A program made the translations under genes and the position numbers. Shown here piece after piece: positions 49,971-64,000 of a stretch of 64,000 nucleotides of DNA. Within the stretch, counting starts at the first letter, position 1. Each line of letters starts with the position of its first letter. A model generated the notes under the pieces. It searched no databases. It saw only the letters and a list, made by a program, of their open reading frames with translations, and was not told the DNA's origin. Source of the stretch: Asterias rubens. Its lineage: Eukaryota. The DNA lies in contig NC_047076.1 of assembly GCF_902459465.1 (NCBI RefSeq), positions 11,842,001 to 11,906,000 of the forward strand, given 5' to 3'.

Positions 49971-52900
49971 ATGGGGAAACAGAACAGTAAGTTAAAACCT
50001 GAGGTACTGGCTGATCTAAAGAAAGCAACGAGTTTCAACGAACAGGAGCTGCAGGAATGGTACAAAGCATTCCAAAAAGGCAAGTATCGCACAAAACAAT
50101 TTAAAATTATTTTTAACGCAATTGGCATGACACCTTTTGGTAATTGTCAAAGACCAGCATTCCCACTTGGTGTGTCTCAATCGTATGCATATAACCTGTA
50201 AAAACTTTGGCTCCATTTGTCATCGAAGCTACAAGAGACTGATGAAAGAAAAAACAACCGTGTTGCACAATTAACTTGTGTGCTTTGAGTGCAAGTATCG
50301 TACAAAACAACGTCAATCTCCCCACGTTGGATCTAAATGCACTATAGACACCTCTGGTAAATGTCAAAGACCAGTATTCTCACTTGGTGTATCCCAATAA
50401 CCAATCTAAAATTTGAACTCAATTGGTCGCGAAGTTGCGAGATAACAATGGATGTGTCGCACGAGACATCCAGGCCCCACGAAATCAATTCAAATATTTG
50501 ACTGAGAAATTACCTCTTTCTCAAAAACTTTGTTACTTCAGAGGGAGCCGTTTCTGACAATGTTTTAAACTATCAACAGCTCTCCATTGTTCGTTTACCA
50601 AGTAAGTTTTAATGCTAACAATTATTTTTGAGTAATTACCAAGAGTCTCCACAGTGCCTTCAAACATGGAGGTAGAATTCCAAACATCTCAAAGTGATGC
50701 TATTTTTTCTACATTTCCGCAGACTGCCCCAGCGGTATCTTATCAGTAGACGAATTCCAGAAGATATATGGAGGTCTTTTCCCCTATGGTGATGCTACCA
50801 AGTTCGCAGCGCATGTCTTTAAATCGTTTGATAGCAACGGAGATGGGACCATCGACTTCCGGGAGTTCGTCACTGCTATGAATCTGACGTCACGCGGGAC
50901 CTTAGAGCAGAAGCTGACATGGGCGTTCAATATGTATGATTTGAACGGCAACGGCTACATATCCAAAACCGAGATGGTTGATATAATTGGTGTGAGTTGT
51001 TTAAAAACCCTTTTGAGTGTTCAATTCCCTTAAAGACACTGGACACTATCGGTAGTTGTCAAAGACCAGTCTTCTCACTTGGTGTATCTCAACATATGCA
51101 TAAAATAACAAACCTGTGCAAATTTGAGCTCAATTGGTCGTCGTAGTTGTGAGATAATAATGATCAAAAGAAAAAACACCCCTGCCACACGAAGTTGTGT
51201 ATTTTATACTGTCAACATCGCTTCAAAATTACTTCTTCCTCGAAAACTAGGTTACTTCAGAGGGAGCCGTTTATCACAATGTTTTATACTATCAACCTCT
51301 CCCCATTACTCGTTACCAAGTAAGGTTTTATGCTAATAATTATTTTGAGTGTCCACGGTCTTTAAAGTGTGCATTCCCTTCAGACAGGGGACCAGTATAT
51401 CTTGTTAAAAAACAGCGGGTAAACGACCTTGCCCTGGCAACTGAAACTTAAAATAAAAAAATGTATCAAGCCTATTCTCTTAGAAGTCAGGTAATGGGAC
51501 TTAAATTGAATTAATTTTCACCCACAAATTTGAATCTGAGATTCTCAGGTATCTGAAAGCACTCAAATTGTATGCACCAAGAGTGTTTTTGTGTCATTAT
51601 TTTCTAGCAACTTCTGTTGGGATACACCAAGTGAGGATACTGGTCTTAGAAAACCCCCAAGAGTTGTCACATAAATAAATTATTTTAAAATCATATAAAT
51701 TATTACATGATTATTATTCATTTTTTATTTTGCCATTTCTTAAACATACAATATTTTTATATAAAAAAGTATAATCTTTGCACAGAGCAAAAAGTGATGA
51801 AAAATACAGACAAAATACAAACATGGCAGCCAAGATTAAGGTGTACTTGAACACTTTGACTCAAAAGTCTGCAAATCTATGCAATGAGGACAAGAGCTCT
51901 CTGAGCTGTTCACACAAACGGTGACTACCAATAAAAACTATGGTATATATTACACTATTAGAGACTTGATTTGTCAAGTCTGAGATACATAAGATTTGAT
52001 GCATTGTATGGTGAGGTATCAGTATATGTTTGGTTTGCGGTAACACCATGTGTGTATCTACTTGCCAGGTAGAGTTTGTTCTTAGAGAACTCTTTCTTTA
52101 TTCGACTACCGCGGAGTAGATTTATCGGATGTAGGAGACTTCTCAGTTCTGAAAAGAATTGTCCTGCTTTTTAACTACTACCCTGGCGAATGGTATAGGA
52201 AATTGGCTGTACCTGGGAGTACTATTTTAGCTTATATAGGAGCGTAATTAAGTGCACTAACCGCGTAGTCGGTTCTTGAATTGGTCTCGACTGTTATAGG
52301 TCTGCAATAGAGCAGCACCTTGCACTGTATACTCTACTACAAGCATAGCTGCTGTCCTGGAGAGGTTACAAATTCAATTCTATGCTCTGTGCTGGTGCTG
52401 TCAAGATTGTGCTTTACAAGAAGGTGATATTGTCAATTTGTCCCGAGAGAGATTGGAAGCTCCATCCCTCTTATAGCTGGCATTGCAAACAGTTCTTATC
52501 AAAATATGATAAGAACCACAAGCACTTCTTTTGATATGGACAATGACTATTACAGACTTGAAGCCAAGTATATCTTATCAGGTTAATTTTCATGCAAACC
52601 ATCCCATAGTATTGGTGCGGGCACCCTAGTCTCCTCTCAATGATCCTCAGCCAACAATTTTAGGGCCACTAGGTGACAGTGTCTATATTTAGTTCTCCAA
52701 CCACAGTACAGTGACCCTTTTAGAAGAACCAATCAAAGCAGTGCCGTCTCTACACTAAAACATCTAAATCCCAATATCATAAAGGAACCAGCATCTTAAA
52801 CAATCTCCTGACGATGGTTAGAGCCAGCTTAAACAAACGTTGAGACCAGTTAAGAACTCCTAGGTAGTAAAGTTAATAACGAGAGGTCCCCTCAATCCGC

Positions 52901-55947: not shown

Positions 55948-56565
55948 GGATGTCGGACACTTCGTACCTTTGCCACTTCCTACCCTGAACACTTCGGGAC
56001 ACTTCGTACCGTAACCAAATTGGTCACTTCGTACCGTTGGCGGGGTACGAAGTGACCATCAGTTGAGTCACTTCGTACCTTCATTAAAATGTGTATTCCT
56101 CAATAATTTAATGTTTGTTGAGATACAAATTAATAAAACATAATGAATTATAATTTTCGTTTGAATATGTGAATGTCATTTTTAATGTGAAACTAGTTAC
56201 CGCCAAGGACAACATCTTCCGCCAATATTTTTTACAAATATTTTAAAGTCAAACAATCACGCAATCGTCGAAATGGCTCCTTGGTCCCAACAAAATAGTA
56301 ACAGTTGGTTTGATTTGCTTTTATTCCATAATAATCCGATCACAAAGCACAAAACAATCATAAACGATGCAGAAATCCCGAATTAGAATGAAGGTAGGAA
56401 GTGTCTTGTGAGAAGGTACGAAGTGACTCGTGAGAAGGTACGAAGTGTCTTATAAGAAGGTACGAAGTGTCTAAAGGTACGAAGTGTCCAAAGTCACTTC
56501 GTACCTTGAAAAGGTACGAAGTGTCCAGGGTACGAAGTGGCAAATGTACGAAGTGTCCTGACACC
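55948..56565. mobile_element. Non-autonomous TIR element with an 8-bp TSD and subterminal CACTTCGTACC repeats
   Basis: TIRs GGATGTCGGACACTTCGTACC / GTACGAAGTGTCCTGACACC. TSD GTTGACAA at 55940-55947 and 56566-56573. A lone left end of the same family lies at 58729-58828. Confidence 0.85.
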
Positions 56566-56684
56566 GTTGACAATTACATTTTTAGCGTTTTCGTACGAAA
56601 ATGCAATGTCAAATTTATATATTACTTTCTTTACAAATCGGATGGCACTGACTTTTAGTTTCACTTCCAAAGCGTTTTGTTGTA

Positions 56685-58720: not shown

Positions 58721-59914
58721 GATAGACGAGGTGTCAGGACACTTCGTACTTTTGCCACTTCGTACCCTGGACACTTCGTACCTTTGCAAGGTACGAAGTG
58801 ACTATGGACACTTCGTACCTTGGACACTCTTTGGATTGGACAAAAATGTGTTCAGTGGACTTGTCGTAAACGGGCCCAAACTCGACCATCATGACTCAGA
58901 TTTTCAATTACTTTGCGCCTTCAGGACGTCCCTCTAATCTTAGTTAGGCTATATATTTTATTTACCTGGTCCCTTTTGTAAATATTTTGCCATGAGTAAC
59001 ATAGTGAAATCACATGTTTGATAAAATAGCCACAGTTGTTTTGCTTACAGGCTTTATAAAATTAGGTTCAGTTCTGAAATATTTTTCATTTCTCTTCATA
59101 TCCAGATCCACACAGATAATCGTCATTCTATGTTACCAGTGACCAGGATACCAGCTGTCTTGGTTCTCTCCTTGTTCTCATTGGTCCATATTCATGCTCG
59201 ACATACTACGATACACCCAGGTGTTCAAGGCTTGTCGGATACCAAGACGTCGTACAAATACATTGATAAGTTAAGTCTATCAAATGACAATAGACGATAG
59301 ATTCAGGAGATACTGCTGGACGCCGGCGCCCAGCATGAAAAGCTGCTAGCAGAGTACCAGGCAGAGGCATACAGACCATTGACCATCGGTAAGAGATATT
59401 TGTCAAGTTTACTTATTGCAATAAATAGTTATGCCTGAAGTTGTGTTTCCAACTTCTTTTGGGCCCTTTTTCAAACCTCGTCTTGGGCTCTGGCTTATAG
59501 GCTCCAAGCTCTATCTACTGGGCCCAATTTCATGGCTCTGCTTGCCGCCGAATTCTGCGCTTACCTGCGTTCCCCGCTTACGTGCAAGCGCCGAATTTCT
59601 GCGCTAGCCTTGTAAGCGTAGAATGCGTACATGTAGCGTGGAATACGCACGCGCAGAAGCCAAAATTCGCCGTAACCCGTGAAATACGCTTGCTGTAAGC
59701 ACAGAATTCCCTGCTTCCGTGAGCGCCGATTCTGCGCTTACGGTAAGCAGAGCCATGAAATTGGGCCCTGATGTTCGAACCACCACGTGAAATACGCGCT
59801 GGTCCAAAAAGGCAGTTTAAAGGCTGAGCTCTGCGTCATGGCCGAGTAGTTTTCTAGTTCTGGTGGTTTACTCATCGAGTGTGGGTTCAAACCCTAGTCA
59901 TGACATTTGTGTCA

Positions 59915-60145
59915 TCGTCGTCATCATCATCATCATCATCATTCTCTGTGGTCCATCAAGAGGGACGTATCGATTTGTTTTAGACTGCCACAGCTGCTGT
60001 GCCGGTGAGCCATGGTCCACTTCTAGCTGGCGCAACCAGGTGTTGTGTGGTCGCCCTCTGGGTCTCTTCCAGGCTGGGCCGGGACGGATTCCCGCTCAAG
60101 CGTTGACGCTCAGCTTGAGGGGGGTATGTGCTGGAGTATATGCTT
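59915..60145 (-). mobile_element. RTE-clade LINE 3' end nested in a SINE
   Basis: The minus strand translates to WKRPRGRPHNTWLRQLE and ends in a (TGA)n tail, seen as (CAT)n on the + strand. Confidence 0.7.
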
Positions 60146-60369
60146 TACTATAATTCGTTCTCTTCACCCAGGGGTACAAATGGGTACCTGCGAGGGTAGG
60201 GGTTGATATTGTGAGTGAAAAAGCCTTTCGAGCGCCATGGCAGCTCGGGGTTGAAATCCCCAGGGAGCTGAGAAAGTTTATAGGAATGTTATTGACTCGA
60301 TGACAAGGGCAATAATGTAAATCGCATTGATTTGGTCAGTGTAAAATGTGCTATAGAACATGGTGGTTA

Positions 60370-60552
60370 AAGGCCCGGTCCCACTGCAGCGATAACGAGA
60401 ACGATAACGATAACGACACAAAGAGAACGCATTCCATTGGTTGAATGAGAGTGTGCATATTCTGCGTGGAGCAATTCATCCAATACAATGCGTTCTCTTT
60501 GCGCCGTGATAGTTATCGTTTTCGTTATCGCTGCAGTGTGACTCGGCCTTAA
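60370..60552. mobile_element. Palindromic MITE with TAA flanks (Harbinger-like)
   Basis: TIRs AGGCCCGGTCCCACTGCAGCGATAACGA / TCGTTATCGCTGCAGTGTGACTCGGCCT. Confidence 0.7.
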
Positions 60553-61401
60553 GTCATCGCAGTGTGGGTTCGAATCCTGTTCAAGACATTTGTGTCCTTG
60601 AGCAAGATGCTTTACTACCAACCATGTTAAATGTCTGTCATCTATCACAGATGAGAGGATTTCCGAGGCCTGAGTTCTACTTCTGACCAATCTGCCTGCT
60701 GCTGCCACGTTACTTGAAGATACGCTTAGCTTCCCAGAAATATCTACTGAGCAGGTAAGTTTAAAGGCACTGGAGGTGTTTGGTAATGTCGAAAACCAGT
60801 GTTCTCACTTGGTGTATCCCAACAAATGCATAAAGTAAACCTGCAAAAATTTTGGCTCAATTGGTCAACGAAGTTTCATGATAATAATGAAAGAAAGAAC
60901 ACCCTTTTTGAAAAATTTACATTCAGTGTGTGCTTTCAGATGCATATGAAGCCTTTTTATTTGACTGAGAAATTACCTCTTTCTTAAACACAAAGACAAT
61001 GTTTTATCAAAGTTGCATTGGCTGTAAGTGCAGTTTTCCGCACTTAGTTGATCCCAGTTCTGTACCCCCAACAAATGTGCGTTTATCTTCTCTTTTTGAC
61101 AGAAAGAGAAGTATATAGGATTTGAGGCATTGTGTGGTGAGGTATCAATGTATATTTGGTTTGCGGTAACACCATGTGTGTATCTACTTGCCAGGTAGAG
61201 TTGTTCTTAGGGAACTGTCTCGCTTTATTCTACTGCCATGGAGTAGATAATCGGAGGTTCGGGAGACTTCTCAGTTCTGAAAAGAACTGTCCTGCTTTTC
61301 AACTATTACCAGGGCGGATGGTATAGAAATTAGACTGGACAACTACTTTAGCTTATAGGATCGTAATTAACTGTACTGCCGCGGAGTCAGTTCTGAAATT
61401 G

Positions 61402-61445
61402 GTCTCAACGTTTCGACTAGCTTGCTCTAGTCATCGTCAGGAGAC
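61402..61445 (-). ncRNA. Minimal type I hammerhead ribozyme in the Penelope pseudo-LTR
   Basis: The minus strand reads GUCUC CUGACGA U GACUAG AGCAAG CUAGUC GAAA CG UU GAGAC: intact CUGANGA and GAAA cores, a 6-bp helix II, a 5-bp helix I and a palindromic AACGUU in place of helix III. Confidence 0.85.
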
Positions 61446-61470
61446 TGAAGAGGTAAGAGAAGAGTGGGCT

Positions 61471-61478
61471 TATTTATA
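61471..61478 (-). promoter_or_regulatory. TATA-like box in the Penelope pseudo-LTR
   Basis: CCCCTATAAATAAG on the - strand, about 26 nt upstream of the hammerhead motif. Confidence 0.4.
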
Positions 61479-64000
61479 GGGGTTCAGTGGATCCACTGCA
61501 GTTCAATCAATGCTCTGATTGGTTGTGTGGTTGGCAGCCTCAGGGCTATGGTTAGGGTTGGCCATTGTGTGAGAAACCTCTCGGGTGTAGTGAGGCGTGT
61601 CAGTAGGTTGGTGGTTGTTAGAGGAGGAGGGTGGTAGGATAGTATGCCAAATGCTGCTGATGAAATAGCCGATATCTTGTGGCACAGTGTCGTGTCTGTA
61701 TATTTCGATAGCTTCCCTTATGCGCCTTGTATACCAATGTCTCTCAGGTGCTATGATACGAGCCTGATCCCAATCTATGACATGGTCTAAATCGGTGGAG
61801 TGTTTGACAATGGCAGATTTGTCATATTCCCCTCTGCGGCCGTGTGCTTTATGTTCTTTTAGCCTGGTAGTTAGGTCTCTACCGGTCTTGCCAATGTACA
61901 CTTTACCACAAGTACAAGGAATTCGATAGACCCCTGCCTGACTGCTAGAGTCATGCTTGTCTTTGTGAGTGTGTAGCTTAGTATCCAACTTGTACGAGTT
62001 CAGTAGTAGACCTTGATTTCGGCCTCACGGAGGATCCGTTGAATTTTGTGTGAGGTATGACCAATGTACGGAAGGACCGCAATGGGCATATCTTTGGATT
62101 GTGCAGACTGAGAGTTGTGTTTTGAAAGGGACTCTCTTTTGTTTGGTTTATACCCATTCTCTTTTAGCACTGTGTTAAGGTGCTCCAGTTCATTAGGTAA
62201 ATGTTCCTTATCACAAATAATGTGTGCCCTTTGAAGTAGGGTCCGGTTCACTGAGGCTTTCACAGAAGGAGGATGGAATGACCGAGCGTTGAGGTAGCGG
62301 TCTGTATGGGTGGGTTTTCTGTACACGGAGTGTGCTAGAGAACCATCAGTCTTCTTGGAAATGAGTACATCAAGGAAAGGTAATGAATCGGATGTCTCAG
62401 TTTCCATGGTGAACTGAATGTTAGGGTGTTGGCGGTTAATGTGACTAAGGAAGTCATCATGGTTTTCCAATCCATGTGACCAAATGATGAACGTGTCATC
62501 CACATATCGGAGCCAAAGTTTGGGTTTGAGTCGAGCGGTACCCAGGGCTTTCTGTTCAAAATCTTCCATGAAAATGTTCGCTAAGACTGGGGAAATAGGA
62601 GACCCCATGGGAGTTCTTAAAGCCTGTCTGTAATATCCATCTCTCCATTGGAAGTATGTGGACTTCACGCATGTCATTAATAGATCATGAATCTGGTCTG
62701 GCGTTAGGCTGGTTCGATCGGTAAGAGTTTCATCTTGTTCTAGTACCGCTTTGGTTATTTGGCAAGCTTCATCGGTGGGTACGTTAGTGAAAAGAGATTT
62801 GACATCAAAACTCACTAATATATCGGATGACTGTAATTCAATTCCCTTGATAATATCGATAAACCCTGCTGAATTGGGTACATGGTGAGGTGTTTTGCCC
62901 ACAAGTGTGTGTAAAAGCTTAGTCAAGTGTTGGGCGAGGTTGTAGGTAGGGGAACCTCGAGAGGAGACAATAGGGCGGAGCGGTTTATCTGGTTTGTGAA
63001 TCTTTGGCTGACCAAAGAATCTCGGGCACTTCGAGGCCGAAGGCCTGAGATGTCTGTACAATGGAGTGGGTATGGCAGTGCTACAGTTTAGGGAGAGGAG
63101 CATGGCAGCGAGCTTCCTTTCAACTGATGGGATCGGGTTCTTCTTTAGGTGGACATAGGTATCTGTGTCAAGGATACTTTGAACCTTTTGGACTTGGGGA
63201 ATGCTCACCGTTTCCTCGGCAACTTGCAGGATGCCAAGACATATCTTGACGAGGCTGAGATGTTGGCCGTCGAGATGGGCGACGTGGACAAGATCACCAC
63301 GGCAACCATCCATCACGGGGATTGGATTCTTGGGAGTGGACATCTGAAGGAGGCTATTGCCAAGGTTTTCCAGCCGCTGTTGAAACGGAATATGAGCGAC
63401 AAGAATAGGGGGCTAATGTTACAGTCATTTGGAAATGCTTGTAGGTAAGTTTGTCGAAGCCACCGATCTATCTGGTTGTCTTTTTTTATGCTTCAACATT
63501 TTATTTTAGTTGCCCAATTTCTTAGAGCTGCTTTCAAAACACAAAAGTAGCTAACACCAAACAATATTGCTTACCAGAATAAGTTTACCAGCCAAGATAT
63601 TTTGTCATGTGTGCTATCTGTACCTGGTATCTTGTTTGGAATTGCTAAAAGCATGGAGTATTGCTCCATGCTAAAAGCAACAATTTTCTGCTTAAGCAGC
63701 TCTCTAAAATTTGGCCCTGGTAAACGTCGTCATATGACATTTTACAACCAATGGGATAAAACCAGCCTTAATTTATGATTGTTGCATTGCATTCCAGGGC
63801 TTCAGCAGACTTCGGAACAGCTAAAGAGTACTTAAGAGAAGCCATCGCTATCGCCGAGCGACTTGAAGATCCTGTTGCCGTGGCAGATCGCCATGGGGAC
63901 TTGGGAACCACTTTTCGGTCGGGGGGGCGGTCCACCGATGCCCTTACCCATCAGAAAAAACAGTTTGTGTTTGCAAAACAAAGAGGCAAGTTATTTCAAC

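What the first reader, a model, noticed from the sequence alone, without database searches (positions are those of the whole stretch)
61103..63444. Penelope element inserted cleanly into a TPR coding exon; the exon can be rebuilt
Seen: an acceptor (TCTTTTTGACAG, 61102) is followed by AAA GAG AAG TAT ATA, then the 3' end of the element. After the truncated RT, the sequence resumes GAC TTG GGG AAT GCT CAC at 63191. Removing about 61118-63190 gives KEKYIDLGNAHRFLGNLQDAKTYL, a good TPR start, in phase with the previous exon. There is essentially no TSD (at most 1 nt), with GGA(T/C)TTG microhomology at both junctions. The RT and GIY-YIG carry only one visible frameshift, so the insertion looks young. 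Inference: a recent antisense insertional knockout, possibly polymorphic. A phase-0 cryptic acceptor (CTCAC...TTTCCTCGGCAACTTGCAG|GAT at 63229) could skip the element at a cost of 18 codons.
Basis: partly seen in the sequence, partly recalled or inferred. Interest (0 to 1): 0.7.

Follow-up and report, generated by a model that had tools for sequence, protein, structure and literature searches.

The report
Old Penelope insertion in a dead gene copy
A Penelope-like jumping gene does sit backwards inside a coding exon, but the host is a decayed partial copy of a starfish TPR-CHAT gene, the same insertion is in five other copies, and a later 391-base deletion means the exon cannot be rebuilt: ordinary gene-family decay.

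Summary
The sequence features are real. An antisense, 5'-truncated Penelope-like element (RT plus C-terminal GIY-YIG) lies at 61113-63187, ten bases after a genuine exon-3 acceptor.

The genome is Asterias rubens. Two empty-site paralogs on C15 and the A. amurensis 1140-aa TPR-CHAT gene show a 464-nt exon 3, starting (Q/K)VKCYHLKYQ and running to HFQAAL before DLGNAHR. "KEKYI" is three host codons plus element bases.

- The same left junction occurs at six loci. Three of them keep the true 5' junction, about 195 more element bases and about 191 more exon bases.
- The window copy later lost 391 bp across that junction (TTG microhomology). Its remaining host exon (267 nt) is out of frame.
- It also has in-frame stops in exons 1 and 2 and its own frameshift in the element.
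- It belongs to a family of 10 or more 5'-partial duplicates. The C-terminal part tested (aa 567-812) exists only once in the genome.
- Insertion-bearing copies form one star-like clade.
- The deletion junction is unique in the assembly, and its words occur in runs from two studies, so it is not a misassembly.

No RNA evidence supports the proposed splices. Verdict: ordinary, low interest.

The parts
59130..59396 (+). Exon 1 remnant of the TPR-CHAT gene copy (signal-peptide end), with an in-frame stop (..NDNRR*IQEIL..)
   Evidence: tblastn of A. amurensis P0006 aa 1-88, 80% identity, stop inside. Sibling copies L014/L039 read RREIQ.
60651..60754 (+). Exon 2 remnant. It has an in-frame TGA at 60671-60673 where every paralog and the ortholog have CAA (Q). 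It ends ..ACT GAG CAG|gtaag, phase 0.
   Evidence: Contigs of three runs read C and A at 60671/60672, i.e. paralog letters.
61091..61102 (+). Genuine exon-3 acceptor (TCTTTTTGACAG)
   Evidence: Same acceptor in the empty paralogs L032/L034 and in A. amurensis L043. It matches the exon boundary in XP models P0006/P0007 (..STEQ|(Q/K)VKCYH..).
61103..61112 (+). First 10 nt of exon 3 (AAAGAGAAGT; ancestral AAAGTGAAGT = K V K + 1 nt). This is all that is left of the exon upstream of the element.
   Evidence: Alignment with empty and filled paralogs; L043 reads cag|AAAGTGAAGTGTTA.
61113..63187 (-). Penelope-like element copy, antisense to the gene. Its 3' end is at 61113/61114. Its 5' side is cut first by the original 5' truncation and then by the window-specific deletion.
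   Evidence: Pfam RT and GIY-YIG. At least 89 matches in the genome, many starting at query 210-215 = window 61109-61114. Ends of independent copies.
61113..61502 (-). Non-coding 3' tail of the element, very high copy number. It holds a hammerhead-like core at about 61402-61445 and a histone-stem-loop-like hairpin at about 61272-61289, both seen by eye only.
   Evidence: Depth hundreds of times higher than the RT part in all four runs. No Rfam family at E<=1.
61503..61988 (-). GIY-YIG endonuclease reading frame (161 aa, open)
   Evidence: PF01541, 27.1 bits against a cut-off of 22.6.
61989..61999 (-). Frameshift between the RT and endonuclease frames. There is a one-base length difference near 61993 that is private to the window copy.
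   Evidence: Seven of the eight other copies compared, siblings and independent ones, differ from the window by one base at 61993/61994; the eighth, L014, does not reach this position. Contigs in X1 and X5 show the same (table 4).
62000..63187 (-). Reverse-transcriptase reading frame (open, about 396 aa, N-terminus missing)
   Evidence: PF00078, 56.2 bits. Only generic RT hits in PDB.
63188..63190 (.). Breakpoint of a window-specific 391-bp deletion. TTG is shared by element and exon. About 195-197 nt of element 5' sequence and about 191-193 nt of exon 3 are gone.
   Evidence: Alignment with L002/L010/L004. Coordinates computed on L002. The junction is unique in the assembly, and its 31-mers are held by runs of two studies.
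63188..63444 (+). 3' part of exon 3 (L DLGNAHRFLGNLQDAKTYL...FGNAC, TPR-like), 100% identical in protein to A. amurensis P0006 aa 190-275
   Evidence: Weak TPR_2 hit, E 0.0023, below the gathering score.
63798..63990 (+). Exon 4 of the gene copy (ASADFGTAKEYLREAIAIAERLED...); the end coordinate is approximate
   Evidence: tblastn of P0006 aa 274-338.

Best explanation
The window holds one decayed member of a recently expanded family of 5'-partial duplicates of a secreted TPR-CHAT gene of the starfish Asterias rubens.

In the ancestor of one sub-clade of these copies, a Penelope-like retrotransposon inserted in antisense, 10 nt into exon 3. The insert was about 2.27 kb and 5'-truncated, as expected for target-primed reverse transcription. 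It removed about 4 target bases and made no target-site duplication.

The disrupted copy was then duplicated at the DNA level to at least six loci on C16, C6 and C1. Each copy decayed on its own. The window copy suffered:
- a 391-bp microhomology-mediated deletion that fused the inside of the RT frame to the middle of exon 3;
- nonsense mutations in exons 1 and 2;
- a one-base frameshift in the element.

Shown here: the insertion, its sharing between loci, the deletion and the lesions. Inferred: the order 'insertion, then duplication', and DNA-level duplication as the copying mechanism.
For: - Species and gene. P0001/P0007 are A. rubens XP models on C15. A. amurensis P0006 is 1140 aa with TPR and CHAT (PF12770).
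- Empty sites. In L032/L034 (C15) and A. amurensis L043, the intron flank (window 60996-61112) is followed directly by 197-198 nt of exon and then by window 63188 onward. The intact exon 3 is 464 nt.
- Filled sites. The identical left junction is found at 5 loci by pattern search, plus L002 with a 5-nt indel. The empty junction is found twice. The true 5' junction is found in 3 loci with 0 mismatches.
- Independent element copies L003/L007 run at least 235 bp past that junction, so the original insert was 5'-truncated.
- Flank trees place all filled copies in one clade (support 100/100 downstream, 95/95 upstream) that is star-like. The empty copies and A. amurensis fall outside it.
- Element and flanks are equally diverged between siblings: 97.3-97.8% for the element against 95.7-97.7% for the flanks.
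- Window-private lesions.
- The C-terminal part of the gene (aa 567-812) matches only C15:3126173-3127704, while the 5' part matches 10 or more loci.
Against: - The order of events is not proven. Gene conversion between pre-existing paralogs could also spread an insertion and make the flanks cluster.
- I could not fetch more genome sequence, so the ends of the duplicated unit are undefined.
- Logan contigs gave no piece bridging 63187/63188. Support for that junction rests on three sampled 31-mers, and one of the two studies may be the assembly's own source.
- Whether A. amurensis carries filled copies was not tested, so the age relative to speciation is unknown.
Confidence: 0.88

Rival explanations
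1. One reading: a recent, clean, possibly polymorphic antisense insertion knocked out a working TPR gene, and deleting about 61118-63190 restores the exon (KEKYI-DLGNAHR).
For: Removing 61118-63190 does give an open frame in phase with exon 2. The element has open RT and EN frames with a single frameshift.
Against: - No paralog or ortholog has KEKYI. All have about 66 extra codons before DLGNAHR.
- The bases coding for YI are the element's terminal bases.
- The same insertion is at 6 loci.
- The copy has stops in exons 1 and 2 and lacks the C-terminal 700 aa.
Confidence: 0.02
2. The insertion arose in one paralog and was spread to pre-existing paralogs by gene conversion, not by duplication after the insertion.
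For: The family is clustered on a few chromosomes (C16, C6, C15), which favours conversion. The star-like clade of the flanks is what homogenisation would also produce.
Against: Homology between the window and the C16:11.46 Mb copy is collinear over at least 8.7 kb with shared structure. Filled copies also lie on other chromosomes (C1, C6). The element and both flanks have the same divergence. Conversion tracts of several kilobases that carry a 2.3-kb insert to five targets are less parsimonious.
Confidence: 0.08
3. The intron-containing partial gene copies were dispersed by the Penelope machinery itself (trans-mobilisation or read-through transcripts), as described for host genes framed by Penelope repeats in the rotifer Adineta vaga.
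For: PLEs can disperse intron-containing host genes (PMC3846280). The PLE-bearing sub-clade has more copies than the empty form (6+ against 2) and is star-like. PLE-tail-like pieces lie at 51986-52292 and about 73204-73302 of the extended window.
Against: The element sits inside the unit and does not frame it. The unit is at least 17 kb. Copies cluster within a few Mb on the same chromosomes, as local segmental duplications do. PLE tails number in the thousands, so nearby pieces are expected by chance. The left ends of the copies are ragged, at query 1473-1624.
Confidence: 0.03
4. The junction at 63187/63188 is an assembly artefact (a collapse between the element and the exon).
For: PLE arrays are known to trouble assemblies (PMC8557442). 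No Logan contig listed bridges the site.
Against: All three sampled 31-mers that span the junction are held by DNA runs of two studies, including two samples of a marine metagenome study. The junction has a clean 3-nt microhomology. The window copy also has other private changes on both sides.
Confidence: 0.03

Closest known systems
Canonical endonuclease-positive Penelope-like elements (PLEs: RT with C-terminal GIY-YIG; Evgen'ev & Arkhipova 2005; Craig et al. 2021, PMC8557442)
   Same: RT followed by a C-terminal GIY-YIG domain in one sense. Frequent 5' truncation. High-copy 3' tail. Inverted or tandem partial copies elsewhere in the genome.
   Different: Nothing unusual in the element itself. 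This copy is dead: 5'-truncated, further deleted and frameshifted. I did not assign it to a PLE clade (Penelope/Poseidon, Neptune, Nematis, Hydra).
Transposon-disrupted duplicated pseudogenes in recently expanded gene families (segmental duplication followed by independent decay)
   Same: The insertion is shared by a clade of paralogs. Each copy has private stops, frameshifts and deletions. The copies are partial and lack the 3' part of the parent gene.
   Different: None of note. The parent is an uncharacterised secreted TPR-CHAT protein of Asterias.
Penelope-mediated dispersal of intron-containing host genes in Adineta vaga (Arkhipova et al. 2013, PMC3846280)
   Same: Intron-containing host gene copies associated with a PLE and present in several copies.
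   Different: There, the host gene is framed by Penelope terminal repeats and target-site duplications. Here the PLE lies inside an exon of a unit of 17 kb or more, and no framing repeats were found. Not a member on present evidence.

Membership tests
Penelope-like element, EN+ (canonical) | Reverse transcriptase domain | tested here: met
   PF00078 RVT_1, 56.2 bits against a cut-off of 29.6, on the minus-strand frame 62000-63187.
Penelope-like element, EN+ (canonical) | GIY-YIG endonuclease C-terminal to the RT in the same sense | tested here: met
   PF01541, 27.1 bits against a cut-off of 22.6, on 61503-61988 minus, directly downstream of the RT frame.
Penelope-like element, EN+ (canonical) | Copies frequently 5'-truncated with a shared 3' end; partial tandem or inverted arrangements | tested here: met
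   Many genomic matches start at the same 3' end (query 210-215) and stop at varied 5' points. Adjacent inverted pieces occur, e.g. on C20:7192366-7193916. L003/L007 extend beyond the insert's 5' end.
Penelope-like element, EN+ (canonical) | Hammerhead ribozyme in the terminal repeat (pLTR) | tested here: inconclusive
No Rfam hammerhead at E<=1 in 60300-64000. By eye, the minus strand of about 61402-61445 has CUGANGA...GAAAC around a 6-bp helix.
Penelope-like element, EN+ (canonical) | RT groups with PLE/TERT RTs in a phylogeny | not tested
   The PDB sequence search gave only weak generic RT hits. No tree was made.
TPR-CHAT protein gene (intact, functional member) | Uninterrupted open reading frame across the exons | tested here: not met
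   Stops in exons 1 and 2. Exon 3 is split by the element and lacks 197 nt.
TPR-CHAT protein gene (intact, functional member) | C-terminal CHAT domain present downstream | tested here: not met
   No match to P0006 aa >440 up to 10 kb past the window. aa 567-812 match only C15:3126173-3127704.

The most novel reading that the evidence does not exclude
The PLE-bearing, intron-containing partial gene copy spread to six or more loci because the embedded Penelope-like element, or its machinery acting in trans on a read-through transcript, mobilised the surrounding host sequence. This would be a long-range version of the Penelope-driven gene-family expansion reported in a rotifer.
Probability: 0.03. 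Interest if true: 0.6.

Novelty: new member of a known kind. Interest (0 to 1): 0.1.

Why it matters
It matters mainly as a correction. An apparently clean, in-frame "rebuild" of an exon around a transposon can be a coincidence. Paralogs and a sister species showed that 66 codons are missing and that the insertion is shared by six loci.

For annotation, it flags a family of 10 or more partial, decaying copies of one TPR-CHAT gene in Asterias rubens, some of which carry protein models. One example is a "G-protein-signaling modulator 2-like" model that starts just downstream of the same insertion in a sibling copy.

It adds nothing new about Penelope-like elements or about gene knockouts.

Tried and rejected
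- Rfam scan of 60300-64000 at E<=1: no hammerhead or other credible RNA family, only three weak miRNA/snoRNA matches below threshold.
- Read laying on 59100-64000 with four runs: the Logan contigs are short and dominated by paralogs and other PLE copies.
  - No piece bridges 63187/63188.
  - No joint 60754>61103 or 60754>63230 is among those listed.
  - RNA depth on exon 2 is about 1.5.
  - Reads on exon 3 mostly carry a paralog letter (63241 A>G).
  - This is therefore no evidence for or against expression of this copy.
I used coordinates from searches instead.
- PDB sequence search with the RT: only weak generic RT hits, no help with PLE clade assignment.
- Paper search for 'Penelope-like' plus 'Asterias': none.
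- Findings search for this gene family: none.
- Misassembly as the cause of the deletion junction: considered and rejected.
- Independent insertions at the same site: rejected because the junctions are identical and the flanks form one clade.

Full report
**1. What is in the sequence**

- The polypyrimidine acceptor ends at 61102 and is followed by AAAGAGAAGT.
- On the minus strand there is a long open frame at 62000-63343 whose element part (up to 63187) hits Pfam RVT_1 (56.2 bits).
- Directly downstream in the same sense, a 161-aa frame (61503-61988) hits GIY-YIG (27.1 bits, above the gathering score).
- The two frames are offset by one frameshift.
- RT followed by a C-terminal GIY-YIG is the architecture of canonical endonuclease-positive Penelope-like elements (PMC8557442).
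- From 63188 the plus strand reads L-DLGNAHRFLGNLQDAKTYL... up to a donor after 63444.

So the observation [quoted passage not shown] holds.

**2. Whose gene it is**

- A protein search with the homologous exon of a paralog returned Asterias rubens models: XP_033639002.1 and, in the same cluster, XP_033639000.1 and XP_033639583.1. It also returned an A. amurensis protein of 1140 aa, P0006.
- P0006 has a signal-peptide-like N-terminus, TPR repeats and a C-terminal CHAT domain (Pfam list).
- The window is G000:C16:11842001-11906000 of a 417.6-Mb assembly.

**3.

They do lack it.
- In the two A. rubens paralogs on C15 (L032, L034) and in the A. amurensis gene (L043), the same acceptor is followed by (Q/K)VKCYHLKYQV(Y/H)MSIGPLSKGLEAAQ...SSLREMHFQAAL, and only then by DLGNAHR.
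- At the DNA level, window 60996-61112 aligns to L034 1179-1300 and window 63188-63653 aligns to L034 1498-1969. That leaves 197-198 nt of exon with no counterpart in the window. The same holds for L032 and L043.
- The intact exon 3 is 464 nt. The window keeps 10 nt before the element and 257 nt after it, and 267 nt is out of frame with 464 nt.
Independent copies of the element end in (A)TATAGGATTTGAGG, so these bases belong to the element.

**4. The insertion is shared, not private**

- A DNA search of the genome with the element plus flanks found other loci that match the flanks as well.
- The left junction (exon bases, then ATATAGGATTTGAGG) occurs at C6:18.238, C6:20.740, C6:21.713, C1:18.677 Mb and in the window (0-2 mismatches). 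It also occurs at C16:11.4625 Mb with a 5-nt indel.
- The empty junction occurs only twice, in an inverted pair on C15.
- Three filled loci (C16:11.4648, C6:18.2358, C6:21.7140 Mb) keep the original right junction...CCAGCTT-TC-ACTTGAAG..., with zero mismatches.
- Comparison with the empty site shows that about 4 target bases (GTTA) were lost and that there is no target-site duplication.
- Independent element copies (L003, L007) stay alike for at least 235 bp past that junction. The ancestral insert, about 2.27 kb in L002, was therefore 5'-truncated on arrival.

**5. What happened in the window copy**

- Relative to L002, the window lacks 391 bp. The gap runs from inside the RT frame to the middle of exon 3, with TTG present at both breakpoints. 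About 195-197 nt of element and about 191-193 nt of exon are gone.
- This junction is unique in the assembly.
- A 60-base query made only of junction-spanning 31-mers was held in full by a DNA run of the species (possibly the source sample) and by runs of two samples of a separate marine-metagenome study. I therefore take it to be real, not a collapse.
- The window copy also has a stop in exon 1, which its siblings lack.
- It has a TGA at 60671-60673 in exon 2, where all seven other copies and the ortholog have Q.
- It has a one-base length difference near 61993 relative to seven of the eight other element copies examined, siblings and independent ones alike; the eighth does not reach that position.

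**6. Family context and timing**

- The 5' part of the gene, with its introns, is present at 10 or more loci at 94-98% identity on C16, C6, C15, C1, C9, C21, C30 and C36.
- The part encoding aa 567-812 matches only one place, C15:3126173-3127704, downstream of the minus-strand empty copy.
- The window's copy shows nothing beyond aa 440 within 10 kb past the window's end.
- The window copy is therefore a 5'-partial duplicate. There is no evidence that it was ever a complete gene.
- Maximum-likelihood trees of the upstream flank (60560-61112) and the downstream flank (63188-64000) put all insertion-bearing copies in one clade (95/95 and 100/100). The clade is unresolved and star-like inside, with terminal branches of 0.004-0.022. 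The C15 copies and the A. amurensis gene fall outside it.
- Element and flanks show the same divergence between siblings, about 2-4%.
- The simplest history is one insertion, then a burst of DNA-level duplications, then independent decay. L002, L010 and L004 each have their own stops, frameshifts or deletions.
- Gene conversion is a possible alternative route for the sharing. I could not fetch more sequence to test it.

**7. Expression and the cryptic acceptor**

- The AG at 63228-63229 is in phase 0, as stated. With stops in both upstream exons it cannot rescue a product.
- Relative to the true exon, its use would drop about 83 codons, not 18.
- RNA raw reads of one run gave almost no depth on exon 2.
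- On exon 3 the depth is about 10 on each strand orientation, mostly with a paralog letter at 63241.
- Neither proposed joint appears among those listed.
- One contig (X1, record 6) covers 63188-63445 and then runs on for about 100 letters that do not match the window. That is expected for a copy with the intact exon.
- This is weak, negative-only evidence.

**8. Comparison with what is known**

- The element is an ordinary dead copy of a canonical EN+ Penelope-like element.
- The host locus is an ordinary transposon-disrupted, duplicated pseudogene.
- The one published phenomenon that could make it interesting is dispersal of intron-containing host genes by Penelope machinery in Adineta vaga (PMC3846280). 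That requires the host sequence to be framed by Penelope repeats and target-site duplications, which is not seen here.
- Against it as well: the element lies inside the unit, the unit is at least 17 kb, and copies cluster locally. I give this reading about 3%.

**9. Verdict**

- "Clean", "rebuildable", "recent/polymorphic" and "knockout" are refuted or unsupported.
- Interest is low.

Noticed in passing
L041:246-1783 (= 64246-65783 just past the window end); also A. amurensis L043:5817-6744: An exon-sized unit that codes for ..GDQAALVVSCFNIGFTHYSMSPPDY(D/N)..LELSDRIG.. is repeated head to tail about 8 times downstream of exon 4 in the window copy and about 5 times in the intact A. amurensis gene. 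These could be decayed tandem exon duplicates or a set of mutually exclusive alternative exons.
   Followed up: no
window 61068-61559: The 3' tail of the Penelope-like element has RNA depth of about 230-300 on both strands in a 2026 RNA-seq run, against about 0-2 over the RT. DNA contig depth is hundreds of times higher than over the RT. So tail-only copies are very numerous and transcribed.

By eye, the minus strand has a hammerhead-like core at about 61402-61445 and a histone-stem-loop-like hairpin at about 61272-61289. Rfam found neither.
   Followed up: partly
G000:C3:11721190-11722492 and G000:C1:27382616-27383295 (match window 63041-63149): A piece of about 106-109 bp from the 5' part of the RT reading frame is amplified into tandem arrays of 7 or more to 12 or more units at other loci. 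In L004 a 150-bp version (63041-63190) is repeated three times with about 46-bp spacers.
   Followed up: no
G000:C16:11465021-11465822 (L002/L033): The RefSeq model XP_033639583.1, 'G-protein-signaling modulator 2-like isoform X2' (216 aa), starts at MHFQAAL, inside the part of exon 3 that lies downstream of the same Penelope insertion in this sibling copy. It looks like a gene model built on a truncated pseudogene.
   Followed up: partly
G000:C15:3126173-3137930 vs the rest of the genome: Only one locus carries the C-terminal part tested (aa 567-812) of this TPR-CHAT gene. Ten or more other loci carry just the 5' part. The two RefSeq models on C15 are themselves short (398 and 252 aa) compared with the 1140-aa A. 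amurensis protein.
   Followed up: partly
window 60400-60550: A foldback of about 77 nt per arm, rich in (AACGAT)n-like units, lies in intron 1 (60474-60550 matches its own upstream flank in reverse). It is conserved in the sibling copies. There is a weak sub-threshold Rfam mir-1179 match at 60417-60503, E 0.17. It is probably a small inverted-repeat element.
   Followed up: no
window 55948-56566: A repeat of about 620 bp present at many unrelated loci at 80-98% identity interrupts the duplicated gene unit in the window. It is absent at the same place in several sibling copies, so it looks like a separate, later transposon insertion (query 1949-2566).
   Followed up: no
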